A stretch of DNA of 64,000 bases, from NCBI RefSeq assembly GCF_902713615.1, contig NC_052155.1, forward strand, positions 55,506,315 through 55,570,314, read 5' to 3'. Below the pieces are notes generated by a model, which did no database searches, had not been told where the DNA came from, and worked only from the letters and a program-made list of their open reading frames with translations. Source of the stretch: Scyliorhinus canicula (lineage: Eukaryota). The position numbers and the translations under genes were made by a program. Positions 1-52,404 of this stretch are shown in pieces (within the stretch, counting starts at the first letter, position 1; every line of letters begins with the position of its first letter).

Positions 1-1506
1 CAAAAGACTATTGCAAATTTTCTAACAAGCAATAGTTCAGAAGCTGAATTAAGTTTCACAATTGGAATCACCCGGTTTGCAGTTGAGATGTACATTTGGG
101 ATATTTTGCCCATTATTTTCACATGACATGGCCATTCAAAGTTGTTTTCAGCTGCAGGTTACAGGGCAGATTGTATTTCAAGTGATTGATGCAAAAATTG
201 GATAGACACCGGTACTCACCAGTGCAGAGGCCAAGAACCAAGCATGACACCAACAGTATGTGTGCCATAAAAAATCATTTTGCTTAAAGACTGGGATGTT
301 AAATAATTCTCTTTATGCCTGCTCAGATTGATATAAAGGCTTGCATGGTGTTATTTCAAGAGGAGTGACAACGTTTTCAGAGTACCTTTGACAAAATTCC
401 GCCCTCACCTGAAACCATCAAAATTATGATCTGGTCATTTACTTCATAGTATTTATGGAACCTTGCTACATGTAAATTTGTTGTGCAATAATTGAATCAT
501 CTGCCAATATATACCTATGAGGCTTCAAGTCTCATTTACACTCGAGTGACGTGCTTTGGGATGTTTTATTATGTTAAAGGCACTGTGTAAATACAAGTTG
601 TTCTAAATGCTTTGGAATTCAAAATTCAGAGGGCTTTCGTCAAGGTAAAACTATTTTCCACCAATCAGTAAGTTGGTAACTCAAGGGCATCAACTTAAAT
701 TCACTGCCAGAATACAAAGGGATTGCTTGGGGAACGCTTTTAAGCAGAGAGCTGATATAACACAGAATAACCAAGCAGAATTCAAAATCTTTTTTTGAAA
801 AAAGGGAAGCTCATTAGTATTTTACAAAGCAGAACTTTAATGGGGAAAGAACAGGAGTTGGGGTGGAACTAATCAGGTAGTTCTTGAGAGCCAGTTCAAG
901 TATGATGAGCCAAATGGAGGTACCTTCTGCACAAAATAATTCTACAATAGCAACGACACTTCAATCACACTTCTATGAAGCACTTTAGCACATCCTGAGG
1001 ATGTGAAATGCACAGCATAAATATATATATTTTTATATTTAAGAACATTCTGATTGCAGCTTTGAAGCCAGACAAAACAGTGATGCCTTCTGTCAAAATT
1101 TCTTGGTCTTCATTGCAATGTTGTTAGATGGACCAAGTTAAAAGCTATTGCAATTATAAGCAGTTTGTCAGTTTAATTACTGTCAGACAATGAAGCATTT
1201 GTCTAGTCTAGTGCACATTGATTAGCTGAGATAAATGTACATCCTTGCCTCCTGGCCAATAATCAGGTGGAGTGAATTGCCAGGCTGATCCAACTTTTAC
1301 TACAGACATTCACAATTTATTCATGGGGAAATCAAACCAGCAACCTATGGCTAGTCATTCTACTTGCCAACTTTTTAAAAGCAAGCGGCCAATACTTTTC
1401 AGACAAAATACGAATCCAACTGCTGGAGGAAAGAAATCCAAGTCCCAAATATCAGGAAAGACTTCAACAAATGCATAGTTTAGAATAAACAGGCTTTTGA
1501 CCTCAC

Positions 1507-1551
1507 CAAAAACCATCCTCCATATTGCTGGATGTGGTCGGGTGAAAGGAC
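1507..1551 (-). CDS. PTDSS1: PTDSS1 coding exon 3 (45 bp); gene continues beyond the left edge
   Basis: tttacAG acceptor, encodes [21 protein letters not shown] donor at 1506. No further PTDSS1 exon was recognised in 1-1506. Confidence 0.95.
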
Positions 1552-1676
1552 CTGTAAAATTGAAATAAAAATCCTTAAACAATGCATCTTTAGATAAATA
1601 AATTGTTTCAGAATATGTAAAATAATATGCAAGAATTGTGATAAATCGCAATTCTCGCTAGTAACAAACAACTTAC

Positions 1677-1768
1677 CATTAGGAAATGCTAAAACACTTA
1701 CAATTAGAAAGAAGAACACCACTGAAAGAACGCCCTTCCATATATTATCTTCTAGACTTGTATCATCC
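1677..1768 (-). CDS. PTDSS1: PTDSS1 coding exon 2 (92 bp)
   Basis: TAG acceptor at 1771-1769. Encodes [35 protein letters not shown] donor at 1676; phases match the neighbouring exons. Confidence 0.96.
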
Positions 1769-2082
1769 CTAGATTTGAAAACAACGGTAACAGTTGGGGA
1801 TTTTTATTTCAGGATTTAAGTCCTATCAAAAGCATTTGGGAAACGCATTAGTTTATTAGACACAACATTTTACGGAGCAATAAAATTTCACAATCCACCC
1901 GCACTGATATGCGAGACAAAGTGGAAGGTTTATTCAGAAGGAGAAAGGAAAAATCGACATAGAATCGAAACCGGGCAAGGAAGTTTACAAAAGTGATACA
2001 TTATAGCACAGGCCTAGCAGTAGAATCTCTGGAAAGCCAGCCTGGTACTCATGCCGGGATGTGAAACGAGACCAGCTGATTG

Positions 2083-2102
2083 ATAGAGAGAGAGAGAGAG
2101 AG
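2083..2102. repeat. (GA)n microsatellite in a PTDSS1 intron
   Basis: gatagagagagagagagagag read directly. Confidence 0.85.
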
Positions 2103-2144
2103 CAGGCAAAGCAAGGGGAGGGAGGGCTGGGCGCAGCCAGCTAC

Positions 2145-2323
2145 CTGGTAAAGGCGAAATACATGACACTGATGATAGTGAAAGTGAGCAGAGTGATGGT
2201 GTGAGGCTTGTAGAAGAAGTCTATGGTGATATCCTCCACTTGCTGCTCGTTGATCATACGGAAATGCAGTTTATAATTCACATCGTTCTTGCTGATTGTC
2301 CTGCTGCCTATACCGGACACCAT
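2145..2323 (-). CDS. PTDSS1: Phosphatidylserine synthase 1, first coding exon (179 bp)
   Basis: Translates [60 protein letters not shown], nearly identical to the vertebrate PTDSS1 N-terminus. GT donor (AG|GTAG) at 2144-2143, phase 2. Confidence 0.97.
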
Positions 2324-3000
2324 GGCTGCAGCGCTCCGCCCGACAAGTCGCGGCAGCCAGCAAGAGCCCAGAGAGCCAGAACACTCCAACGTCAACCAGT
2401 CTGAGACAGACAGAGGGGGGGGAATAACTAACCCTCAAATACAAAAACACCTCCTCCGGGCAACACTGGCAGGGCATTGATCAGACACACAACATGTACA
2501 TCTTTTACATATAAGGTGGGATATTTTGAAATTGCGAGATGCTGTCTATTAATCTAAAAGAAAGATGTGTGAAAAACACTCCCCTGTCGTTGATGGTGGA
2601 CTGTTCCATTCAGGCACACAGCTACATTTTAGAACGTCCTTGGAGCACGTGGGGAGGGGGAGTATCGACAGAGAAAAAAGACAGCTGATAGAAAGAGGAA
2701 TAGCTGAGAGAGAAATAGAAAGAGAGAAATAGCTGACACAGAGAAAATTAGCTGATGGAGGGAGAGAGAGATAACTGATAGATGAGAGAAATAGCTGATG
2801 TAGAGAGAAATAACTGATAACAAGGAGAGACTACTTTCCCAACCCAGTCTTGAGTCTGTAAGGAGGGGGGATACAGGCAAGCAAGAGAAATAGCCACTAT
2901 TCGGAGTGAGAGGAAGCTGAGAGATATTTTTGAATCCTACCTACAATCTGCCAGGTGAGAGAAACAGCTGATAAAGGGATTGTGGTGGTTGGGGGGTGGG

Positions 3001-6000
3001 CAGCCCCAGCCCCAGCCCCAGCCTGCTCTGATCAGCCCCAGCCCAGTCTGCTCTGATCAGCCCCAGCCCAATCTGCTCTGATTAGCCCCAGCCCAATCTG
3101 CTCTGATCAGCAAAGTGAGTGAAGGAGCTGATGGATAGAGGGGTAAACCTTCCCCAGCCCAGTCTGCTCTGATCAGCAGAGTGAAGGAGCTGATTGATAG
3201 AGGGGAAACCCTCCCCAGCCTAGTCTGATCTGATCAGCAGAGTGAGTGAAGGAGCTGATGGACAGAAGGGTGAACCTTCCCCAGCACAGACTGCTCTGAT
3301 CAGCAGAGTGAAGGAGCTGATGGATAGAGGGGTAAACCCTCCCCAGCCCAGACTGCTCTGATCAGCAGTGAAGGAGCTGATGGATAGAGGGGTAAACTTC
3401 CCCAGCCCAGACTGCTCTGATCAGCAGAGTGAAGAGCTGATGGATAGAGGGGTAACCTCCCCAGCCCAGACAGCTCTGATCAGCAAGTGAAGGAGCTGAT
3501 GGATAGAGGGTAAACCTTCCCCAGCCCAGACTGCTCTGTCAGCAGAGTGAAGGAGCTGATGGATAGAGGGGTAAACCCTTCCCCAGCCCAGTGCTCTGAT
3601 AGCAGAGTGAAGGAGCTGATGGATAGAGGGGTCCCTTCCCCAGCCCAGACTGCTCTGATCAGCAGAGTGAAGGAGCTGATGGATAGAGGGTAACCTTCCC
3701 CAGCCCAGTCTGCTCTGATCAGCAGAGTGAAGGAGCTGATGGATAGAGGGGTAAACCCCCAGCCCAGACTGCTCTGATCAGCAGTGAAGGAGCTGATGGA
3801 TAGAGGGGTAAGCCTCCCCAGCCCAGACTGCTCTGATCAGCAGAGAAGGAGCTGATGGATAGAGGGGTAAACCTCCCCAGCCCAGACTGCTCTGATCAGC
3901 AGAGTGAAGGAGCTGATGGATAGAGGGGTAAGCCTTCCCCAGCCCACTGCTCTGATCAGCAGTGAAGGAGCTGATGGATAGAGGGGTAAACTTCCCCAGC
4001 CCAGACTGCTCTGATCAGCAGAGTGAAGGAGCTGATGGATAGAGGGGTAACCTTCCCCAGCCCAGACTGCTCTGATCAGCAAGAGTGAAGGAGCTGATGG
4101 ATAGAGGGGTAACTTCCCCAGCCCAGACTGCTCTGATCAGCAGAGTGAAGGAGCTGATGGATAGGGGGTAAACCTCCCCAGCCCAGACTGCTCTGATCAG
4201 CAGAGTGAAGGAGCTGATGGATAGAGGGGTACCTTCCCCAGCCCACTGCTCTGATCAGCAGAGTGAAGGAGCTGATGGATAGAGGGTATCCCTTCCCCAG
4301 CCCAGTCTGCTCTGATCAGTAGAGTGAAGGAGCTGATGGATAGAGGGGTAAACCTTCCCCAGCCCAGACTGCTCGGATCAGCAGTGAAGGAGCTGATGGA
4401 TAGAGGGGTAAACCCTCCCCAGCCCAGACTGCTCTGATCAGCAGTGAAGGAGCTGATGGATAGAGGGTAAACCCTCCCCAGCCCACTGCTCTGATAGCAG
4501 TGAAGGAGCTGATGGATAGAGGGGTAAACTTCCCCAGCCCACTGCTCTGATCAGCAGAGTGAAGGAGCTGATGGATAGAGGGGTAACCTCCCCAGCCCAG
4601 ACAGCTGATCAGCAAAGTGAAGGAGCTGATGGATAGAGGGTAAACCTTCACCAGCCCAGACTGCTCTGTCAGCAGAGTGAAGGAGCTGATGGATAGAGGG
4701 GTAAACCTTCCCCAGCCCAGACTGCTCTGATCAGCAGAGTGTGTGAAGGAGCTGATGGATAGAGGGGTAAACCTTCCCCAGCCCAGACTGCTCTGGTCAG
4801 CAGAATGAAGGAGCTGATGGATAGAGGGGTAAGCCTTCCCCAGCCCAGTCTGCTCTGATCAGCAGAGTGTGTGAAGGAGCTGATGGATAGAGGGGTAAAC
4901 CCTCCCCAGCCCAGACTGCTCTGATCAGCAGAGTGAAGGAGCTGATGGATAGAGGGGTATCCCTTCCCCAGCCCAGTCTGCTCTGATCAGCAGAGTGAAG
5001 GAGCTGATGGATAGAGGGGTATCCCTTCCCCAGCCCAGTCTGCTCTGATCAGTAGAGTGAAGGAGCTGATGGATAGAGGGTAACCCTCCCCAGCCCAGAC
5101 TGCTCTGATCAGCAGTGAAGGAGCTGATGGATAGAGGGGTAAACCCTCCCCAGCCCACACTGCCGATAAGCAGTGAAGGAGCTGATGGATAGAGGGGTAA
5201 AACTTCCCCAGCCCAGACTGCTCTGATCAGCAGAGTGAAGGAGCTGATGGATAGAGGGGTAATTCCTCCCCAGCCCAGACAGCTCTGATCAGCAAAGTGA
5301 AGGAGCTGATGGATAGAGGGGTAAACCTTCCCCAGCCCAGACTGCTCTGATCAGCAGAGTGTGTGAAGGAGCTGATGGATAGAGGGGTAAACCCTCCCCA
5401 GCCCAGACTGCTCTGATCAGCAGAGTGAAGGAGCTGATGGATAGAGGGGTAATTCTCCCCAGCCCAGACAGCTCTGATCAGCAAAGTGAAGGAGCTGATG
5501 GATAGAGGGGTAAACCTTCCCCAGCCCAGACTCGATCAGCAGAGTGTGAAGGAGCTGATGGATAGAGGGGTAAACCTTCCCCAGCCCAGACTGCTCTGGT
5601 CAGCAGAGTGAAGGAGCTGATGGATAGAGGGGTAAGCCTTCCCCAGCCCAGTGCTCTGATCAGCAGAGTGTGTGAAGGAGCTGATGGATAGGGGGTAAGC
5701 CCTCCCCAGTCCAGACTGCTCTGATCAGCAGAGTGAAGGAGCTGATGGATAGAGGGGTATCCCTTCCCCAGCCCAGTCTGCTCTGATCAGCAGAGTGAAG
5801 GAGCTGATGGATAGAGGGGTATCCCTTCCCCAGCCCAGTCTGCTCTGATCAGTAGAGTGAAGGAGCTGATGGATAGAGGGGTAAACCTTCCCCAGCCCAC
5901 TGCTCTGATCAGCAGTGAAGGAGCTGATGGATAGAGGGGTAAACCCTCCCCAGCCCAGACTGCTCTGATCAGCAGTGAGGAGCTGATGGATAGAGGGGTA

Positions 6001-40739: not shown

Positions 40740-41300
40740 CGTGGTGCTTCCACTGCCAGCATGCAGCACCTTATCCTCATCGAGCAAGAGCAGACTCTGC
40801 AATCAACACAGGCACGTGCACCTCCGGCTTACGTATCAAAGGCACGCTCACGCGCGAATCGTCATTACTCACGCGCACGCAGGACGGGACCAAGACTGTC
40901 CTGCACACCCGCGCGGGGACGCGCACGCATACACGCACGCACGGCATCTTTACGTGTCTCCACCACCCCCTGCGGATTATTCTGGATGGTGATAACCGCG
41001 CAGCCGCACTGACCTCCTGGCCAAGAAGATGGCGGCGAGAGCCCCAGGTGAGAGCTACTGGTTGTTATAAGCCGCTGCCTAGGCGAGGGCGAAGGGGAGG
41101 GAGAGGTCGGACGTGATGAAGCCGGTATAACGGCTCCTGCGCGCCTCTTGTGACAGTGTACCGTCCAGCTGGTCAGAGATGAGCGCTTCGGCCTTGGGTT
41201 GTCCTTGAAGGGGATGTGGGGCGATTGCCCCGGCGGCCATCAGAGTGAGGGAGTCCCACTCGGGGCTGAGCTCCTGCCCGGGGACCGTGACTAACTCCAG
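40740..41300 (+). promoter_or_regulatory. UQCRB CpG-island promoter
   Basis: Dense CpGs, repeated gcgcacgc motifs (NRF1-like) and a YY1/TISU motif GAAGATGGCGGC over the ATG. Confidence 0.8.
41029..41047 (+). CDS. UQCRB: Cytochrome b-c1 complex subunit 7, exon 1 (19 bp)
   Basis: ATGGCGGCGAGAGCCCCAG|GTGAGA inside the CpG island; phase 1 matches exon 2. Confidence 0.9.
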
Positions 41301-42249
41301 CGGCAGGACAGGTTCCCGCCCTGAGGCCTGTAACTCCCTGACATTGGGAAGGGAAAGGAAACTTGCCTTGATATCGAGCTCAAGGTGACCCAGGAGAAGA
41401 ATCCTTGATGGAGACCGTTCGGCTGGTCGTGCCCGTGCTGCCTCTTTGGCGGCACGTTGATCAGATAGATTCTTCTACATGTTTTGGGAATACCCCTCTT
41501 TTTGTCTTTTATACTGTCACTTTCCTGGTCGAGATGAAGATAATTGAAGTCTCCTATTGTCACTGCTCTGTAGTCCTCACATCTCTAATTTTCCTGTAAA
41601 GACCCTCTTCTAAATCTTAAACTATTTGGGACTCAATGGTATACACCCTGATCAGTAATAGCTCCTGCCTTTGACTTCCAACTGTATCATCCTCCATTAC
41701 TGTAACTGTTTATGAGGGGTGGCACAGCATTGCTGGCTCACAGCACCAGGTACCCGGGCTTGATTCTGACCTTGGGTCATTGTGTGGAGTTTGCACATTC
41801 TCCCCGTGTCTGTATGGGTTGCCTCTGGGTGCGCTGCCCCCCCCCCCCCCCCCCCAAAAGACCAAACATGTGCAGGTTAGGGGCTTTTCACAGTAACTTA
41901 ATTGAAGCTACTTGTGACAATAAGTGATTATTATTATTATAGGTGGATTGGCCATGCTAAATTATCCCTTAGTGTCCAGAGTGAGATTATGGGAATATAG
42001 TGGGGGATTGGGCCGAGGTAGGGTGATCTAGCAGAGGGTCAGTGCAGACTCGATGGGCCAAATGGCCTCATTCTGCACTGTAGGGATTTTGGGATCGATA
42101 CTGTCATCCCATTTCCTGTTACCTTCCTTTTCTTTCCTTAATTCCTTGTAGCCATGAGTATTAAGTTCTCAGTCGTTCCCTTGTTTGAGCCAGGTCTCTG
42201 TCATTGTCACACTATTGAAGATCTATGTTAATTCTTCTGATCTGACTTT

Positions 42250-43130
42250 CTACACACATTGCTCAAGCATGAATCCAGAGTTGAATTCAGCAATTCTGTA
42301 GTTGAATTCTGTTTTAACGACACCTTGTATTCCCAAATAGATGGTGTCACCATGGGATCCCCTCTAGCCCCACTCCAAACATCTTTGTTGGTTTCCATGA
42401 GAAATGCAACACTGATGGAATGACACCTAACCTCCTATTCCTTGCATATTTCCAATAAGTAGATATGTTTGCTATATTTGAATCAAGAACTGCATGTAAG
42501 AACATTTTAGGTGCTTATTCATCTTATTCATCCTGCGCTTAAATTCACCTTTAAAATGGAGCAGTCAAACAAGCTCCCTTTCCTCAATACGCTAGTTAAG
42601 AAATCTGCCCAGGATTCTCTATTGTTTCCTGCAAGCCGACCTTCATTGGGCAATATATGCATTGACATCCTGCAGTTCCAATTACCATAAGATTGGCCTT
42701 GTAAGCAACTTTGTAAACAGGGCTCAAGCCATTTGGTCACTGTACAAGCTTGATGCTGAAATAGGGCACATCAAAGCCATGCTGCAGGATAATGGCACCA
42801 TGATTAGATCATGGCTCACTTTATATCATGCAGACTCATGAATGGGCCTAAGGTTGCTACTTTCAGACCTGAAAAGTGCCCAGTTCTACCTCATTACCTG
42901 GAAGGGTAAGGTGTCTCAAAGATTGGAACAATAGGTGAAACTAGCATGTTGTCAGTATGCAGTAGCAACACGGGTAGTGTTTTCCACTAACAATGCTGCC
43001 ATCAAATCGAAAGGATATCCTGCCTGTCACACTAATGAGCAATGTGGTATATGAATTTCAATGCCGGTGTGGTATCAGGTATATAGGCTGTACACTCCAA
43101 TGATGGCAGATCGTATCAAACAGCAAGAGC
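42250..43130 (+). mobile_element. Penelope-like element remnant
   Basis: RT motif EFCFNDTLYSQIDGVTMGSPLAP (~42300-42375) and GIY-YIG-like NVVYEFQCRCGIRYIGCT (~43040-43095); frameshifted. Confidence 0.75.
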
Positions 43131-43340
43131 CTTCACTCTGCTCCCTTGCAGTCACACACTGGTTTTCCTGAACCTCTGTGTTAGAGTGTGTTCTATATAA
43201 AACTATTAAATTTATTTCCCTCTGTTATGCTTTGGGAGCATTTATCAATCACTTTTGAGCTCAATGAATGAGTCTGAGTGATTGGAGGTAGAGATGTTTC
43301 CTGGATTGTGATAACTTTGAGCACTAATGTCTCTCACCCT

Positions 43341-44578
43341 TGTTAGGATATTGGGCCACACCCCAACATTTGTTAGCACATCGGACTAGAACCCCAGTTT
43401 TTAAAATTTTGTAAAACTTTTCTTGTGTTTCTAATAATTTCATTTGTAATTGAATTTTAGCTAATTTTAATGTTTCAGATTGTGTCTCTGGCAAAGTTAA
43501 ATGCTGAGCTATCGCTTCAATTATCTCCACCTTCCTCACCCCCTTCAGGTAAAGTCAACTGCAACTTGACTGCCAAATCCAAAAGCTTTGTTTTAACCAC
43601 CCTTTGTAAACCAACCAGAGTGATCTCTTCCACACCCAGGAAACTCTTTGCCACTGAAAGAACCATTTTACCAGTCACTCCCTGTTTAAACTGACAAGAG
43701 TATCAACACCTGAAATAAAGCACCAGTTTCTCTCACACGCTGTCTTTACATTCAATAATCCAAAACAAACTAGGAATGATACTTTTTAATCCCGATAAGA
43801 GCCCCAATTTTGTTAGGACACTGGACCAAACCCTAATATTTGGTAGGATACCAGACAAAACCCAAACAATTTTTTTTTTTAAAGTAAAACTGTGAGGAAT
43901 GGATACTTAACCCCAGGAGTGATCACTCTGGCCAATAGGTATCTTTTATGTTAATACAAACTTTAAATTAAACACATAATTAACCACATTAACATCAAAG
44001 AAAATAGCTGTGCAATTATCAGTTAAATTCTTCTTAAATACAAGGAAAAACCTAAACTTATTATCTATACCTGCTACTAACTCCAATTAAGCAATACAGT
44101 TCAAATGCCACTGATAAATAAAGTTAACAAACAGATTACTTGCTTGGTTGTGTATACACTCTTGGAGAGTGCGGCCCTTTCAGGAGCAGAACCAATACAT
44201 TTCAGCTCAACCTAGCAGCATTTGGCAAAACTGCTATGTAACTTAAAATCCTTCTGTCTTGTCAGACTCAAATTCTGGGGCAAACGGCAAAACTACAGAC
44301 AGATCTGGTCCCTCCCATAATTGCATATCTGTATCCCATTAAGATATCACATGACCTGCTTAGTTAGGACTAAATATATTGCCTCATAAATTATGTACTC
44401 TCCAGGAAATATCCAGTAATCATAATGATCCATAAACCCTCTGTGTAAACAAGTAAATCGTTAGAATCGATCATGACTTCACCTTTTATGACTTCTTAAT
44501 TACAGCTTTAGCATACACACATAACTTTAATCTAGGTTCTTTAACATTACTGCAACAAATATATACCTTTTAATAACA
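43341..44578 (-). mobile_element. Gypsy (Gmr1-like) LTR element with a large internal deletion
   Basis: LTR at 43811-44578 (TG..CA), tRNA-Pro-like PBS (TGGGGCTCTTATCGGG) and gag N-terminus (..LLDLAVKLQL..RKVEIIEAIAQHL). An ~80-bp stub of the other LTR lies at 43341-43420. Confidence 0.7.
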
Positions 44579-45156
44579 TTACTGCCATAAATATAATATA
44601 ACCATTTCTACATTCATCACGCCTTCTCTCAGTCTTACAAGTAATAGCCCGTGGCATTTTAAACCTATGAAAAATATGCGGCTTGCGTCGATATAGACCC
44701 TTTTAAAGTGAATTAAGTACTTCAGAAATGTAGTCATTGTTGTGAGGTAGGAAACATAGCAAGCTCTCGCAAACACAAGTATGATAGTGGCCAGGTAGTT
44801 TTTTTTATTCATTCATGGGATGTGTGTGTGACTGGCTGGGCCAACATTTATTGTCCAAATCCAAGGGCATTTATGGGTTGACCACATTGCTCTGGATCTG
44901 GAGTCACGTGCAAACCAGACTGGGTCAGGACGCCAGATTTCACTCCCTAAATTACATTAGTGAACCAGATGGGTTTTTACAACAATGGTCTCAGGGTCAT
45001 CATTAGACTTTTTTTAATGATGTTTTTATTGAATTCAACTTTCACCAACTGCCATGGTGGGATTTGAACCCGGGTGCCCAGAGCATTACCCTGGATTTCT
45101 GGGTTACTCGTCCAGCGACAATACCGCTCCGCCACTGCCTCCCTGTTACTTCAGAG

Positions 45157-45822
45157 GTAAATGGTGCCGAGGTGGAGATGGTTGACAGCTTCAAATTCCT
45201 AGGTATGCACATAACCAACAGTCTGTCCTGGTCCACCCACGTCGACGCTACAACCAAGAAAACACAGCGCCTACACTTCCTCAGGAAACTAAGGAAATTC
45301 AATATGTCCACATTGACTCTTACCGATTTTTACAGATGCACCAATAAAAACATCTTATCAGACAGCATCACAGCCTGCTTGGCCCAAGGTTGCAAGAAAC
45401 TTCAGAGAGCCGTGAACACAGCCTAGTCCATCACACAAAGCTGTCTCCCATACATTGACTGTCTACACCTCCCACTGCCATGGGAAAACAGGCAGCATAA
45501 TCAAAGCATAATCCCACCCGGATTAATTCTCCCATCGGGCAGAAGATACAAAAGCCTGAGAACAAACAACTAACAGGTTCAAAAACAGCTTCTTCCAACT
45601 GTTACCAGACTCCTGATTGACCCTCTTAGGGCTGAACTGAAATCTCTTTGCATCTTCTCTACTGTTGTAGCACTATACTCCATATGCTTCACCTGATGTC
45701 TATGTATTTACATTGTGTATTTATCGGATGCCCTGTGTTTTACATGTATAGAACGATCTGCCTGGACTGTGCGCAGAACAATATTTTTCACTGTACTTGG
45801 TACACGTGACAATAAATCTAAA
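45157..45822 (+). mobile_element. Rex1/Babar-type LINE 3' fragment
   Basis: VEMVDSFKFLGMHITNSLSWSTH..QRLHFLRKLRKF. Related copies at 47420-48825 and 60160-60690. Confidence 0.75.
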
Positions 45823-46412
45823 TGCTGGTAAGGATGATGAGAAGAACTCATCTCTTTTCAAAATAGTACCATAGGATCGTTTATGTCAAATTCAGAAATC
45901 CATCATGGCCTCGGTTTGACATCACAAACAAAGTATTAGCCTTGAGTGGGGGCTTAAACTCACAGTTATCTAGCTGAGACCAGAGTGAGGCGAGCCATGG
46001 CTGACCCCTAAATTCATTTTATATTAAAACTGAGTGTAATTCATCCTCTGATAACTTGTATGAAAAAATGTGATCAGAAATTCCAAACCAACAGCAATAA
46101 ATGCTGCCTTTCTAGTATTGAAATGAAATGAAAATGAAAATCGCTTATTGTCACGAGTAGGCTTCAATGAAGTTACTGTGAAAAGCCCCTAGTCGCCACA
46201 TTCCGGCGCCTGTCCGGGGAGGCTGGTATTCATCAAAGCCCAAGAACAATGTTTTTAAAAAGTGCCCTGGCTCAATGATTTTCTTACAGTGAGTATTTTT
46301 ATGTAACTGAGTTTTTCTGTGTACACTGATTTTAAATCAGAAAATTTGGTTGCCTAGTTTGGACTTTTTCTTCTGTAAGTGAGTTATGTTTTGTATATTT
46401 TCCTTCCCCCAG

Positions 46413-46484
46413 CCAAAGCAACAAGCAGTTTGCTTCAAAGCCTTCAAAAGTGGTACTATAATGCTGCAGGGTTCAACAAATATG
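46413..46484 (+). CDS. UQCRB: UQCRB exon 2 (72 bp)
   Basis: Encodes KATSSLLQSLQKWYYNAAGFNKY; ccccccAG acceptor, GTAAGT donor. Confidence 0.96.
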
Positions 46485-47419
46485 GTAAGTTTTAGTTTAT
46501 ATTCCTGTTGACTTTTTCCATATTTTCTTTCATTCTCAGGATATAGGCATCACTGGTATGGAAAATATTTATTACCCATCTCTAATTGACTTTTAGAAAC
46601 TGGTGGTGAGCCACCTTCTTGAACCCATTCAGTTAACACTGCCACAATGCTGTTAAGTAACAGGTTCTAACATAATTGGCCTGGTGATGATATAAGTCCA
46701 AGACAAGTTGGTGTGTGACTTGAATGAAAACAAGGTGTGTGTGTTTTCAATCACCTGCTCACCTGGAGATTGCAAGTTTAGGAGGTGCTGATGAAGACTG
46801 GGCAAGTTCTGTAGTGAATCTTCTAGATAATAAATACTGCAAATATTTTAAAATGTATGACATAGGAGCAGAATTAGGCCATACCGCCCGTCGAGCATGC
46901 TCCGCCATTCAATTATGGCTGATAAGTTTCTCATCTCCATTCTCCTACCTTCTCCCCATAAGCCCTGATCCCCTTAATCAAGAACCTATATATCTTTGTT
47001 TTAAAGACACTCAGTGATTAGGCCTCCATAGCCTGCCGTGGCAACGACTTCCAAACATTCACCACCCTCTGACAGAAGAAATTCCTCCTCATCTCCATTT
47101 TAAAGGATTGTCCCTTCAGTCTGAAGCTGTGCCCTCAGGTTCTAGTGTTTCCTATGAGTGGAAACATCCTCTCCACATCCACTCTACCTAGGCATCTCTG
47201 TATTCTGTAAGTTTCAATAAGATTCCCCCCTCATCCTTCTAAACTCCAACAAGTACAGATCCAGAGTTCACAACCGCTCCCCCTTGGCACTCACATGCCA
47301 GCACATGGCTTCGGTGGGGGAAAGAGCATCACAGTAAAATCTGATTCAGAACTCAACAGTCTGCTGCTAGCCCCCACCCCAATCATTTATATCCCATTTC
47401 CTAACCCAGTGAGTACTCT

Positions 47420-48825
47420 ATTCCGTAGTTCCCATCTTCTTCAAGAAGACCATCATTATACTGGTGTCAAAGAAGAACCAGGCAACATGCCTCAACGACA
47501 ATTCCAGTGGCCTTGACATTTGTCATTTATGAAATGCTTCGAGACGTTGGTCATAAGACACATCAACTCCATTCTCACATAATGCCTTGATCCACTGCAA
47601 TTCACATACCGCCACAACCGGTCCACAGCAGACGCCATCTATTTGGCCCTACGCTCATCCCTGGAGCATCTCAACAAAAAGGACTCCTATATAAGACTCC
47701 TATTCATTGCCTACAGTTCCTCCTTCAACACCATAATCCCAGCCAAGCTCATATCAAAGCTCCAAAATTTAGGTCTGGGCTCGTTCCTCCACAACTGGAT
47801 CCTCTACTTTCTGACACATAGACCACAATCAGTAAGGATAAACAACAACACCTACTCCAGGATAATGCTCAATACCAGGGGCCCTGCAAGGCTGCTTACT
47901 TAGCCCCCTACTATACTCCCTACACATAAGTGACTGGCAAGATTTGGCTCCAATCCATCTACACGTTTGCTGACGACTTGTGGGTCAGGTCTAGAGCAAT
48001 GATGAGTCAGAATACAGGAGGGAGGTAGAGAACCTAGTGTGGTGTAACAACAATAGTCTCTCCCTCAACGTCAGCAAAACCTAAGAACTGGTCATTGACT
48101 TCAGGAAGAGAAGTATCGTACGCACCCCTGAATGAATCAGTGGAGATGGGGATGGTTGACAGCTTTAAATTCCTAAGTGTACACATCACCAACAATCTGC
48201 CCTGGTCCACCCACGTCGACGTCAAGACCAAGAAAATACAACAGCACCTACACTTCCTCAGGAAACTAAGGAAATTTGGCATCTCCACATTGACTCTTAC
48301 CAATTTTGACAGATGCAACATAGAAAGCATCCTATCTGGTTGCATCACAACCTGGTATGGCAATTGCCCGGCCCAAGGTTAAGAAACTACAGAGAGCTGT
48401 GAACACAGCCCAGTCCATCACTGGAACCTGCCTGCCAGTCATTGACTCTGTCTACAGGTTCGCCTCCCATCCATGTCCCACCGTCTTGGGAAAGCGGGCA
48501 GCATAATCAAAGATCCCTCCCACTTGGGTTATTCTCTCTTCCGACTTCTTCCGTCGGACAGGAGATTAAAAAGTCTGAGAACACGCACCAACCGGTTCAA
48601 AAACCACTTCTTCCCTGCTGTTACCAGACTCCTGAATGACCCTCTTATGGACTGAACTGATCTCGTTACATCTTCTCCACTGAATAGTACTACACTTCGT
48701 AAGCTCACCTGATTTGTGTCCCCATGTATTACATGCATGTCCTATCTTTTTTCTGTATGGACTGTATGCAGAACAATTCTTTTTGCTGTACCTCGGTACA
48801 CGTGAGAAATCAAATTCAATTTAAT
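47420..48825 (+). mobile_element. Rex1/Babar-type LINE RT remnant nested in CR1
   Basis: [34 protein letters not shown] and SFKFLSVHITNNL motifs. Confidence 0.8.
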
Positions 48826-48934
48826 TCATTCCCGAGGTCATTCTTTTGAACCCCCTCTGGACCCTTTCCGAGGCCAGCACATCCTTCCTTAGATACAGGG
48901 CCCCAAACTACTCGCAGTACTCCAAATGGGATCA

Positions 48935-50334
48935 AACGTATGCAAGCCGAAACATTTTAGACTGTCAAAATACAGTTTCATTTATATTTTCGGAATAGTA
49001 GCATGATGAGATGACTAACGTCTCAATTGTTGCAGATAAGCAACAATTGGAAGTGGCGTTGCATTGGGAGGATGGATGGCTTGTTATCAAATCAAATGTG
49101 TTTTGAATATAGCTTAAACCAATTAGGATTATATTGGGGTGTGATCGGATCGCTTAAGACAGATATGAAAGAGTATATCCATGGATGATTTGGCCACCAT
49201 TTTAGACAAGAAAGACAGAAAGACAAGAAGAAAGAAAGACAAGAAGAAAGAAAGACAAAGAGACAGAGAGAACGAGACAGGAAAGAGACAAAGAGAACAA
49301 GACAGAGAGAGAGAGAGAGAAAGTAAAGGAAGAGAATTAGAAAAGAGTTCTGTATTCCTATTTCATTTTCATACTTTGACTTCAGCCTTTGACTTTTAAA
49401 GTTGTGTTCAGGCTATTGTCTCAGAAGATAATTCCTGTGATTCTTTGAAGAAAATCAAATTGTCTACAAACTACCTTTTAAATCATTTTCAAGTTGTAAT
49501 CAATGAACTTCAATAAAACAATTCTTATTTGCACCTGACAAGTTTTTAACTTGAATTTCTACTGAGTTTCAGCAATGTCTCAACAACAACCGGCAACCGT
49601 AAATTGAAAATCTTTAAAATCCAAAGATACAACACTTGGCGTAGTCGGCAGGATTTTAAAGATTTTTCAATTTACGGTTGCCGGTTGTTGTTGAGACATT
49701 GCTGAAACTCAGTAGAAATTCAAGTTAAAAACTTGTCAGGTGCAAATAAGAATTGTTCTATTGAAGTTCATTGGTTACAACTTGAAAATGATTTAAAAGG
49801 TAGTTTGTAGACAATTTGATTTTCTTCAAAGAATCACAGGAATTATCTTCTGAGACAATAGCCTGAACACAACTTTAAAAGTCAAAGTATGAAAATGAAA
49901 TAGGAATACAGAACTCTTTTCTAATTCTCTTCCTTTACTTTCTCTCTCTCTCTCTGTCTCTGTCTTGTTCTCTTTGTCTCTTTCCTGTCTCGTTCTCTCT
50001 GTCTCTTTCTGTCTTTCTTTCTTCTTGTCTTTCTTTCTTCTTGTCTTTCTGTCTTTCTTGTCTAAAATGGTGGCCAAATCATCCATGGATATACTCTTTC
50101 ATATCTGTCTTAAGCGATCCGATCACACCCCAATATAATCCTAATTGGTTTAAGCTATATTCAAAACACATTTGATTTGATAACAAGCCATCCATCCTCC
50201 CAATGCAACGCCACTTCCAATTGTTGCTTATCTGCAACAATTGAGACGTTAGTCATCTCATCATGCTATTATTCCGAAAATATAAATGAAACTGTATTTT
50301 GACACAGTCTAAAATGTTTCGGCTTGCATACGTT
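48935..50334. repeat. Long inverted repeat (foldback): arms 48935-49622 and 49651-50334, 28-bp spacer
   Basis: The arms are reverse complements with only a few substitutions and small indels. The twin ORFs 49181+ and 50086- reflect this symmetry. Confidence 0.97.
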
Positions 50335-51476
50335 ATGGAATGTGGTTCAGGCTGTTATCACAAGTGGCCAGAAATCAGAACAATGGAGCCTTTAATTATT
50401 CCACCTTTATTGCCATGAGACTTTGCTGCTGTCCTTGAAAGAATGTGATGTTTTTATCAGTGGTTCTGTTTTTCCCAAACACATGTCTGAGTTTGGAAGT
50501 TGTATATTTCTTTCATTTTAAAACTGGGATTTAATATTTCTGTCTTAAACAGTCTTCTTACCTATATTAAGTGTATTTAAAATACCTGACTTCTACAGAT
50601 CTGACCAGAGCCTTATACAGCCTCAGAAGTACATCCCTGCTCTTGTATTCTAGCTCTCTCGACATGAATGCTACCATTGCATTTACCCTCCTAACTGCCG
50701 ACTGAACCTGCACGTTAACCTTAAGAGAATCTTGAACTTGGACTCATAAGCACCTATGTATTTCAGATTTCCGAAGCAGTTTCCCATTTAGAAAATAGTC
50801 TATGCCTCAATTCTTCTTACCAAAGTGCATATCCTCACACTTTTCCACATTGTATTCTATCTGCCACTTCTTTGTCCAATCTCCTAGTCTATCCAAGTCC
50901 TTCTGCAGTCCGCCTGCTTCCTCAGTACTATCTGTCCCTCTGTATATCTTTGTATCATCTGCATTCACTGAATTCAAATTCTAAAACTTCTATCATATGA
51001 TTTGAAATTGCATTCTTTGGTTAGTAGTTCACTCACATAAATATATATATATACATAAATATATGAACACAAATCGTATAAATCAAATGCACAAAGTATC
51101 TTTTTGAGAAAACACTTGTTGCCTCTTCCTTTTTGTTTGCTAACCCCTTTGTGGATGATATGGTTTCGACCACAGATTCTATGTTTTTTAAGCGTCACTC
51201 TCCAGCACCATAAAATAATTAAAGTAAAACAAAGTCTGCTACTTGAAATAGTCTGCCGGAAACCTGCCACGTCAACGTTAAAATACACCATTTAAACGTG
51301 ACTTATCCAGTTTCTGCATATGGTCTGCTTTCATTATGCATTATCATTCCTGGTCCTGCAGATCAATTCTGCTGCTTCATGGGTGCTTTCTGGTTTTAAA
51401 GAAATTACATTCAGGAAATTACATTATCTGAATTGATCACGAATGAGATAAGTACTTTAAGTATGTTTGTTTCCAG

Positions 51477-51643
51477 GACTTGTGCGCGATGACATATTGT
51501 ATGAAGATGATGACGTAAAAGAGGCTGTGAGAAGGTTGCCTGAAAACCTTTATAATGATAGAAATTTCCGCATCAAACGAGCTTTGGATTTGAGCATGAA
51601 GCATCAAATCCTTCCAAAGGAAATGTGGACAAAATTTGAGAAG
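51477..51643 (+). CDS. UQCRB: UQCRB exon 3 (167 bp)
   Basis: Encodes [56 protein letters not shown]. Confidence 0.97.
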
Positions 51644-52326
51644 GTAATTTGCTGACATCTGTAGAAGGGGAAATGTTTACTACAGTAGGTCTTCTTCCCA
51701 GTCCCTCCATCCACTCCACTAATGTTTTTGGGTCTTCCCAGCCATGCAGTTCCCTCAACAGTTAACTGTAACCCAGAGAGCTGCCAAATACCTCAAGCCT
51801 TGTTGCTTTGATATGCCAATGAGCAATACTGATTTGCCTACCTTGGGTTTTTTCTTTGTGTCAAGGCAGGAACTCCTCGCTGGATTTCTTTATATAGAAT
51901 GTATAGCATAGAAACAGGCCATTAGGCCCAGGGATTTATTTTGTAAATAGGTATTTCTACTCTGTAAGAACATTCTTCCACCCCTTTTACATTTCATGTA
52001 GTCCATTCAGCATCATTTCTTATTCATAGCTAATTTCCCCTTAAATGCCATTTGCTTAAACCACTCCTTGTAGCAAGTTCCACTTTCTAGCCATTTCCCG
52101 ACTAGAGATTCTCCTAAATTCCCTAATGTACTTGGAATTTATATTCATAACACCCAGTTTTGGTCTTTCCTTCAAGTCAAAACATCTTCCCTACCTTTAC
52201 TGTATCAAGTTTTTCTTACTAAAGAATCCCTTAAAAGAATAAAGAAAACAGTTATTTATATAAATATATTGATACAAAAAATGTTACACTTAAAAACGGT
52301 TCTATTCAACCCATTCTTTGTTGCAG

Positions 52327-52404
52327 GATATGCGCTACCTAGAACCATACCTTAAAGAAGTTATCACCGAACGAAAAGAAAAAGAAGAATGGGATAAGAA
52401 GTGA
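52327..52404 (+). CDS. UQCRB: UQCRB exon 4 (78 bp incl. TGA)
   Basis: Encodes DMRYLEPYLKEVITERKEKEEWDKK*. The joined CDS is 336 nt = 111 aa. Confidence 0.96.
   Translation, partial: DMRYLEPYLKEVITERKEKEEWDKK

What the first reader, a model, noticed from the sequence alone, without database searches (positions are those of the whole stretch)
48934..50597. Young 1.4-kb near-perfect palindrome of unrecognised origin inserted in UQCRB intron 2
Seen: arms of ~688 and ~684 bp around a 28-bp spacer differ only by a few substitutions, a 13-bp indel and microsatellite slippage. The insert also carries ~260 bp of unique sequence on the right. It splits an old CR1 whose halves rejoin (..ctccaaatggGATC / GATCtgaccagagcc), leaving a 4-bp GATC duplication (48930-33, 50598-601). 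Known: long, tight inverted repeats extrude cruciforms and are unstable, and when transcribed form dsRNA substrates for ADAR and Dicer. Inference: this is either an undescribed foldback/MITE-like element or a repair-generated palindrome. Every UQCRB pre-mRNA would carry a ~680-bp stem.
Basis: partly seen in the sequence, partly recalled or inferred. Interest (0 to 1): 0.7.

Follow-up and report, generated by a model that had tools for sequence, protein, structure and literature searches.

The report
Retroelement copy with snapped-back inverted arm
The 1.4-kb palindrome in a catshark UQCRB intron is real, but it is most likely one copy of an abundant, still unclassified shark repeat whose front 688 bases were copied backwards as it inserted, a known side-product of retroelement insertion and not a new kind of mobile hairpin.

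Summary
The left arm is 48935-49622 and the right arm 49651-50334, around a 28-nt spacer. The arms differ by 3 substitutions and 5 indels. A 263-nt tail follows, and a GATC duplication sits in a CR1-like LINE whose reading frame closes once the insert is removed.

The genome is Scyliorhinus canicula, and the insert lies in UQCRB intron 2 on the sense strand.

The origin is partly resolved. Arm and tail belong to one interspersed repeat family of roughly 100 or more copies, and they are adjacent in other copies too. The central 68 nt (49603-49670) is at single-copy depth. Its 31-mers occur in only 4 runs from 2 studies, whereas arm and tail sequence occurs in all 20 runs that hold any of the stretch. 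So this is not a foldback or MITE family, and probably not a long-read artefact.

The form (target site, antisense copy, sense copy, tail, target site) matches the snap-back 5' junctions described for target-primed reverse transcription. The Penelope-type form fits less well: there is no hammerhead motif and the tail is 263 nt, not 30-40.

The UQCRB coding span in S. torazame is 1.78-1.82 kb shorter, which fits absence of the insert there.

The family's class, the outer junctions in independent reads, and any RNA effect remain untested. Other agents of this scan have reported Penelope-type palindromic insertions elsewhere in this genome, on other DNA.

The parts
48930..48933 (.). Left copy of the 4-bp target-site duplication GATC
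   Evidence: The family consensus across the empty site comes table 7. The frame closes.
48934..48934 (.). Single unassigned base A between the duplication and the palindrome. It is not part of the mirror and not part of the target.
   Evidence: The mirror of 50335 would be T.
48935..49622 (-). Left arm (688 nt), read as the antisense (snap-back) copy of the right arm. It carries a private T at 49500 where the family and the right arm have C.
   Evidence: alignment. table 3 (49500 T>C in all family contigs).
49204..49336 (.). Purine-rich microsatellite-like tract inside the left arm (mirror at 49941-50063). It holds the 2- and 4-nt arm differences.
49374..49386 (.). 13 nt present in the left arm and in family contigs but missing from the right arm. 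This is a deletion between CTTTGAC direct repeats in the right arm.
   Evidence: In one search, contigs lie across the place without a gap.
49603..49670 (.). Locus-specific centre: the inner 20 nt of each arm plus the spacer, at single-copy depth
   Evidence: depth is 1221 at 49500 and 7.4 at 49615 in X1, and X18 contig 9 leaves the window sequence after 49602; centre words are held by only 4 runs.
49623..49650 (.). 28-nt spacer (loop); no terminal microhomology to the arm
49651..50334 (+). Right arm (684 nt), read as the native sense copy of the repeat family, continuous with the tail
   Evidence: table 8: contigs 10 (X18) and 28 (X5, a different family copy) run across 50334/50335.
50335..50597 (+). 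Tail (263 nt): native 3' continuation of the family unit, with no mirror copy. An exact 95-nt contig (50442-50536) has depth 673 in X1 and 451 in X3, against about 5 for single-copy DNA.
   Evidence: tables 2 and 8
50598..50601 (.). Right copy of the target-site duplication GATC
48000..48933 (-). Host LINE fragment, downstream half (RT C-terminal region from ..HLEYCE onward, plus 3' part). The family is very abundant; the left limit was not mapped.
   Evidence: table 2 (summed depth 1e4-1e5)
50602..51024 (-). Host LINE fragment, upstream half (..NADDTKI..LYKALVRS)
   Evidence: table 2 (depth falls to single-copy level after about 51024)
46485..51476 (+). UQCRB intron 2, which holds the insert
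   Evidence: In one search, RNA contig 32 jumps at 51476.

Best explanation
This is one insertion event of an abundant, still unclassified interspersed repeat of Scyliorhinus canicula, made by target-primed reverse transcription with a snap-back. As inferred, a staggered cut at GATC in an old CR1-like LINE primed cDNA synthesis from the 3' end of the repeat's RNA (window 50597), back through the tail and the right arm. About 48 nt beyond the family's recognisable sequence, the cDNA's 3' end folded back and copied 688 nt of itself. That end was then joined to the upstream target, with one extra A. Copying this long strand produced the layout antisense arm, 28-nt loop, sense arm, tail, all inside one 4-bp duplication. 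Shown here: the anatomy, the duplication, the repeat-family origin of arm and tail and their native adjacency, the single-copy centre, and the private mutations in each arm. Inferred: the RNA intermediate, the element's orientation, and the timing of the fold-back. As a consequence, UQCRB pre-mRNA should carry a ~680-bp near-perfect stem. This was not tested.
For: The anatomy and the duplication are. In DNA runs X1 and X3, arm and tail show summed depths of 400-5000. An exact 95-nt tail contig has depth 673 and 451, against about 3-7 for single-copy contigs. Contigs of other family copies cross the arm/tail border, so the right arm plus tail is the native order and the left arm is the extra copy (table 8, records 10 and 28). 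Both arms share states that differ from the family majority (49077 T and its mirror 50190 A; 49065/49067 and their mirror at about 50200), so both arms derive from one copy (table 3). The centre is at single-copy depth, and its spacer-touching 31-mers are held by only 4 runs, whereas arm and tail words are held by all 20 holding runs. One duplication brackets the whole structure, and the left end is not a natural terminus. That fits a mechanism that needs only the 3' end of the element. The same layout is documented experimentally for R2 insertions: 'snap-back' 5' junctions in which the cDNA 3' end primes on the cDNA itself before joining upstream DNA (PMC11204384). LINEs are the recently active elements in this genome (PMC11979771). 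The two S. torazame assemblies have UQCRB coding spans of 9,593 and 9,561 bp against 11,376 bp here. The difference is 1,783 and 1,815 bp, and the insert plus duplication is 1,668 bp.
Against: No evidence shows that the family is a retroelement. It has no RT or EN coding signal, no poly(A) or recognisable LINE 3' tail, no tRNA head, and no shared 3' end with any LINE in the window. Several RNA-run contigs of different variants stop at 50563, 34 nt short of the insert's end, so the family's 3' terminus may not coincide with the insert's right end. The fold-back point shows no microhomology. The outer junctions were not seen in independent contigs. The torazame comparison rests on gene length only, because no DNA could be fetched. 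All read evidence comes from assembled contigs, not raw reads.
Confidence: 0.5

Rival explanations
1. Penelope-type double priming. A dimeric RT/endonuclease cut both target strands and each strand primed a cDNA on the same kind of RNA. The two copies met head to head, and one started 263 nt inside the RNA, which produced the one-sided tail.
For: Penelope-like elements typically leave an inverted 5'-truncated copy upstream and a tail at one end only (PMC8557442). The anole PLE enzyme cleaves and extends both strands and starts reverse transcription internally (PMC11167929). Other agents of this scan report many such palindrome-plus-tail insertions in this same genome (unchecked notes). If the family unit has a fixed 5' end near 49602/49671, two full-length cDNAs would meet as observed.
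Against: There is no hammerhead core (CTGANGA) on either strand and no Rfam hammerhead hit even at E up to 5. There is no RT or GIY-YIG signal. The tail is 263 nt, not 30-40. The inner ends coincide to within 28 nt while the outer ends differ, which is the reverse of what two independent, randomly truncated cDNAs give. Both arms share the 20 locus-specific inner bases.
Confidence: 0.17
2. A DNA-level fold-back. A break in the LINE was repaired by copying an ectopic family copy with a strand switch (template-switch or hairpin-capped end replication). Alternatively, an ordinary insertion was later duplicated in inverted form by such a process.
For: Inverted duplications with small loops arise from self-annealed 3' overhangs at breaks, including breaks made during L1 insertion (bioRxiv 10.1101/2024.12.14.628481). 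The 48 locus-specific nt at the centre and the possibly non-family 34 nt at the right end could be donor-locus flanks. No retroelement hallmark was found.
Against: A clean 4-bp duplication around the whole insert with no loss of target bases is the signature of a staggered cut and insertion. A later duplication would have had to break exactly at the element's 5' junction without touching the duplication.
Confidence: 0.15
3. A mobile foldback or MITE-like element that transposes as a palindrome.
For: Long, near-identical arms and a short target-site duplication.
Against: The centre is at single-copy depth while the arms are at about 100x or more. Native family sequence (263 nt) lies between the right arm and the duplication. 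Other family copies carry the arm-to-tail order in one orientation.
Confidence: 0.04
4. An assembly artefact (fold-back chimeric long read or misjoin) in the reference assembly.
For: The window has the same UQCRB span as the public S. canicula assembly, so there is no independent assembly check. The outer junctions were not seen in independent contigs. Only 1-2 of 5 sampled centre words were found per run.
Against: Spacer-touching 31-mers occur in short-read contigs of two studies and at least three samples. The arms differ by 3 substitutions and a 13-nt deletion, with private derived states in each arm. The LINE frame and the duplication are exact.
Confidence: 0.06

Closest known systems
Snap-back 5' junctions of non-LTR (R2) target-primed reverse transcription (PMC11204384)
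   Same: The upstream target is followed by an antisense copy of the insert's own 5' part, then the sense insert, with the natural 3' end on the other side. The antisense part is templated by the cDNA itself.
   Different: There the snap-back segments were seen in engineered R2 insertions in human cells. Here the arm is 688 nt, the event is germline and fixed or common in a shark, and the element's class and enzyme are unknown.
Penelope-like element insertions with an inverted 5'-truncated copy and a one-sided tail (PMC8557442, PMC11167929)
   Same: Inverted copy upstream, unique extension on one side only, one duplication around the whole insert. Other agents' notes say the form is common in this genome.
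   Different: No hammerhead motif and no PLE coding sequence. The tail is 263 nt and not 30-40. The arms coincide at the inner ends, not the outer ends.
L1 twin priming (5' inversion)
   Same: An inverted 5' segment inside a single target-site duplication, arising during TPRT.
   Different: Twin priming inverts a different, upstream part of the element with little overlap (from established knowledge). Here the two arms are the same 688 nt.
Foldback elements and long-TIR MITEs
   Same: Long inverted arms, a short central segment, a short target-site duplication.
   Different: Those transpose as palindromes, so many copies share the centre and both outer ends are termini. Here the centre is single-copy and one outer end is internal to the insert.
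Inverted TE pairs in introns (for example inverted Alu pairs) as dsRNA and ADAR substrates
   Same: Intronic inverted repeats predicted to form long dsRNA in pre-mRNA.
   Different: Here both arms come from one event, are 99.6% identical and lie 28 nt apart. No RNA editing or small-RNA data were examined.

Membership tests
Foldback / MITE-like DNA transposon | Many copies share the whole palindrome, including its centre | tested here: not met
   Depth is 1221 at 49500 but 7.4 at 49615. Centre 31-mers are in 4 runs only, against arm and tail words in all 20 holding runs.
Foldback / MITE-like DNA transposon | Both outer arm ends are the element termini and abut the target-site duplication | tested here: not met
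   263 nt of native family sequence lie between the right arm and the right GATC.
Non-LTR retrotransposon insertion with snap-back 5' junction | One target-site duplication around the whole insert, with the target otherwise intact | tested here: met
   GATC at 48930-33 and 50598-601. The LINE frame closes and the family consensus runs across the site.
Non-LTR retrotransposon insertion with snap-back 5' junction | The antisense segment is a copy of the adjacent sense segment and abuts the upstream target | tested here: met
   Arms are 99.6% identical and share states that differ from the family majority. The left arm starts 1 nt after the duplication.
Non-LTR retrotransposon insertion with snap-back 5' junction | The sense part ends at the family's common 3' terminus | tested here: inconclusive
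   Contigs of several variants stop at 50563, 34 nt before the insert's end. There is no way here to align whole genomic copies.
Non-LTR retrotransposon insertion with snap-back 5' junction | The family is a retroelement (an RT-encoding master, or a 3' tail shared with a LINE partner, and variable 5' truncation) | not testable with these tools
   No coding signal in the fragment. No shared tail with LINEs in the window. Genome-wide copies could not be fetched.
Penelope-like element insertion | Hammerhead ribozyme motif in the repeated terminal part | tested here: not met
   No CTGANGA on either strand of 48900-50640. No Rfam hammerhead at the gathering score or at E up to 5. The Naiad clade of PLEs also lacks it, so this does not exclude all PLEs.
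Penelope-like element insertion | 30-40-bp tail at one end only | tested here: not met
   The one-sided extension is 263 nt.
Penelope-like element insertion | PLE RT / GIY-YIG coding sequence in the family | tested here: inconclusive
   There is none in this 0.95-kb fragment, but 5'-truncated copies need not carry it.
L1-type twin priming | Inverted and direct parts are adjacent, essentially non-overlapping parts of the element | tested here: not met
   The arms are the same region along their full length.
CR1-like LINE (host of the insert) | RT C-terminal reading frame (..ADD.. to ..LVRPHLEYC..) continuous across the restored site, and a very high copy number | tested here: met
   Assignment to the CR1 clade rests on motif recall, not on a phylogeny.

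The most novel reading that the evidence does not exclude
The repeat that supplied arm and tail is an undescribed class of short non-autonomous shark retroelement that regularly inserts as snap-back palindromes. This copy would then make UQCRB, a housekeeping gene, a constitutive source of ~680-bp intronic dsRNA (an ADAR or Dicer substrate) that is present in S. canicula and absent in S. torazame.
Probability: 0.07. Interest if true: 0.55.

Novelty: new member of a known kind. Interest (0 to 1): 0.3.

Why it matters
The finding is a clean germline record of a snap-back event during insertion of a mobile element in a shark. It has an unusually long (688 nt) and young antisense arm, and the target site is fully preserved. 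Such fossils show that a side-reaction seen in engineered R2 insertions also happens in nature. It also places a near-perfect 680-bp hairpin in every pre-mRNA of a highly expressed mitochondrial-complex gene. That gives a natural test of how sharks handle long intronic dsRNA, with S. torazame as a likely insert-free comparison. It does not reveal a new type of mobile element.

Tried and rejected
- **Other copies in the window.** blastn (word sizes 9 and 7) and nhmmer found none.
- **Family copies through proteins.** Three open frames of the arm were searched in the large protein sets and gave no relatives. Exact look-up of two arm ORFs found nothing on record.
- **Metagenome scan.** A 26-mer of the high-copy tail gave 0 hits.
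- **Orthologous introns.** The S. torazame and S. canicula loci were found, but no DNA was returned because the files are too large. Only gene spans could be compared.
- **RNA families.** Rfam gave only sub-threshold miRNA-precursor matches, which any long hairpin produces. They were rejected as chance.
- **Other sequence signals.** No tRNA or SINE head and no Pfam domain.
- **A-to-I editing.** The A>G and T>C counts in RNA contigs (X5, X18) are matched by the DNA runs (X1, X3), so they reflect family variation. Contigs cannot show editing in any case.
- **Sequencing adapter.** A 13-nt resemblance of ..TCTCAACAACAAC.. (about 49578-49590) to a long-read hairpin adapter, recalled from memory, was rejected. 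It lies about 45 nt from the centre, sits in an AAC microsatellite, and is covered by short-read RNA contigs of the family (record 9).
- **Restriction-ligation artefact.** GATC is also the DpnII/MboI site, but the insert holds four uncut internal GATC sites (49143, 49148, 50116, 50121) and the contigs come from long reads.
- **Earlier notes of this scan.** Look-ups by sequence were blank.

Full report
**1. Observation**

The palindrome exists as described.
- A gapped alignment of 48934-49640 against the reverse complement of 49620-50340 gives 675 aligned columns with 3 mismatches and 5 gaps of 2, 2, 4, 13 and 1 nt.
- The left arm is 48935-49622 (688 nt), the spacer 49623-49650 (28 nt) and the right arm 49651-50334 (684 nt). 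The repeat finder reports the same arms in ungapped blocks.
- The small gaps lie in a purine-rich microsatellite-like tract. The 13-nt gap (49374-49386) lies between two CTTTGAC repeats.
- The tail 50335-50597 has no second copy in the window.
- GATC stands at 48930-33 and at 50598-601. One unassigned A (48934) sits between the left GATC and the mirror.

**2. Setting**

- The window's UQCRB exons equal the Scyliorhinus canicula protein P0127. The ATG-to-stop span (41029-52404, 11,376 bp) equals that of the public assembly.
- UQCRB is on the + strand. The insert lies in the roughly 5-kb intron between the exon ending ..NAAGFNKY and the exon starting GLVRDD, which is intron 2.
- The flanks are a LINE on the minus strand. 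With the insert and one GATC removed, the frame reads ..NADDTKI .. LYKALVRSHLEYCE.. without a break.
- Contigs of other copies of this very abundant LINE (summed depth 1e4-1e5) give the consensus ..CTCCAAATGGGG|TCTGACCAG across the site (tables 2, 5c, 7).
- The 4-bp duplication and the 'halves rejoin' claim therefore hold. Calling the LINE CR1-like rests on my recall of the ..LVRPHLEYC.. motif, not on a phylogeny.

**3. Where the insert comes from**

I laid the contigs of four public runs of the same species on 48000-51600: two DNA runs (X1, X3) and two RNA runs (X5, X18).
- **Copy number.** Single-copy DNA has contig depths of about 3-7 (records 1, 2, 22-24). The bins of the arms and the tail have summed depths of 400-5000. 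A contig identical to 50442-50536 has depth 673 in X1 and 451 in X3. Arm and tail therefore belong to a repeat family with on the order of 100 near-identical copies, and more at 90% likeness.
- **Native order.** Contigs of other copies cross the arm/tail border (record 28 of X5, with 8 differences, and record 10 of X18). So right arm plus tail is the family's native order, and the left arm is the extra, inverted copy.
- **One source copy.** At 49077 and its mirror 50190, and at 49065/49067 and their mirror near 50200, both arms share a state that differs from the family majority. Both arms therefore descend from one copy.
- **Private changes in each arm.** The left arm has T at 49500 where the family and the right arm have C. 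The right arm lacks 13 nt that the family has. This is what a real, slightly aged duplication looks like.

**4. The centre is private to this locus**

- Family depth falls from 1221 at 49500 to 7.4 at 49615 in X1. A 355-nt contig of X18 leaves the window sequence after 49602.
- I searched the run index with 49593-49680, a stretch in which every 31-mer touches the spacer. Only 4 runs hold any of the 5 sampled words: two runs of one sample in study P1 and two samples of study P4. Arm and tail words are held by all 20 holding runs from 6 studies.
- This makes a transposing foldback family unlikely.
- It also argues against a long-read fold-back chimera, because those contigs come from short reads of at least two studies. 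The support is thin, at 1-2 words per run, and the outer junctions were not seen independently.

**5. Mechanism**

The structure is: target duplication, A, antisense 688 nt, 28-nt loop, sense 684 nt, 263 nt of native 3' continuation, target duplication.
- Only the right end can be a natural element end. The left end is an internal point of the family unit.
- The antisense arm is what results if the cDNA's 3' end folds back and copies the cDNA before joining the upstream DNA.
- Exactly this junction class ('snap-back', templated most often by the cDNA itself) is reported for R2 insertions (PMC11204384).
- LINEs are the recently active elements of this genome (PMC11979771).
- A later inverted duplication is less parsimonious, because it would have to break exactly at the 5' junction without touching the duplication.

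I put this reading at 0.5. It is not higher because nothing shows that the family is a retroelement:
- no coding signal;
- no poly(A);
- no tRNA head;
- no tail shared with a LINE in the window;
- several contigs stop at 50563, 34 nt before the insert's end.

**6. Rivals**

- **Penelope-type double priming (0.17).** It is a serious alternative. The form 'inverted upstream copy plus one-sided tail' is described for these elements (PMC8557442). The enzyme extends both target strands and starts internally (PMC11167929). Notes of other agents report many such insertions in this genome (unchecked). Against it: no hammerhead core on either strand, no Rfam hammerhead at E up to 5, and a tail of 263 nt and not 30-40. 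In addition, the inner ends coincide while the outer ends differ.
- **DNA-level template switch or hairpin-capped break (0.15).** It is known around L1-induced breaks. It would explain the private central 48 nt and the possibly non-family last 34 nt as donor flanks.
- **Foldback or MITE family (0.04).**
- **Assembly artefact (0.06).**

**7. Age and distribution**

- The arms differ at 3 of 675 sites (0.44%). Without gene conversion this means a recent event, on the order of a few million years at typical slow vertebrate rates. This is inference; no shark rate was looked up.
- The two S. torazame assemblies have UQCRB coding spans of 9,593 and 9,561 bp. These are 1,783 and 1,815 bp shorter than in S. 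canicula, and the insert plus duplication is 1,668 bp. That fits absence in S. torazame but does not prove it.

**8. Consequences**

- Because the intron is transcribed on the + strand and the structure is symmetric, the pre-mRNA should contain both arms. The predicted fold is one stem of about 680 bp at -1181 kcal/mol.
- RNA-run contigs with 0-2 differences to the insert exist (records 9, 10 and 13 of X18), but they cannot be told apart from other family copies.
- A>G and T>C counts are alike in the RNA and DNA runs, so there is no sign of editing at contig level.

**9. Verdict**

Its origin is partly explained: one copy of an abundant shark repeat that gained an inverted 5' arm at insertion. 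It is a new example of a known kind of insertion by-product, not a new mobile hairpin. Three things remain open: the class of the repeat family, independent confirmation of the outer junctions, and any effect on RNA.

Noticed in passing
window 48000-48967 and 50598-51024: The LINE that hosts the insert belongs to a family with summed contig depths of 1e4-1e5 in DNA runs where single-copy DNA has about 5. It is one of the most abundant repeats of the genome and is also prominent in RNA runs.
   Followed up: partly
window 49024-49049 (mirror at about 50218-50243): Inside each arm there is a small perfect hairpin, CAATTGTTGC-AGATAA-GCAACAATTG. It is part of the repeat family itself and its role is unknown.
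   Followed up: no
window 50563: Contigs of at least three sequence variants from two RNA runs all stop at 50563, 34 nt before the insert's right end. This could be the family's true 3' terminus, a variable (TA)n, or a transcript end.
   Followed up: no
window 49615: In DNA run X1 the only two contigs over this place (total depth 7.4) read C where the window has T. This is either a SNP of the palindrome centre in another individual or a second low-copy relative, possibly the source copy.
   Followed up: no
window 48930-48933, 50598-50601, 49143, 49148, 50116, 50121: The target-site duplication GATC is also the DpnII/MboI site. Four more GATC sites lie uncut inside the insert, so a restriction-ligation origin is unlikely.
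   Followed up: yes
window 51476-51600: RNA contigs of 1303 nt (X5, depth 2130) and 594 nt (X18) jump from here to the exon ending at about 46484. This confirms the splice of UQCRB exons 2 and 3 and high expression.
   Followed up: partly
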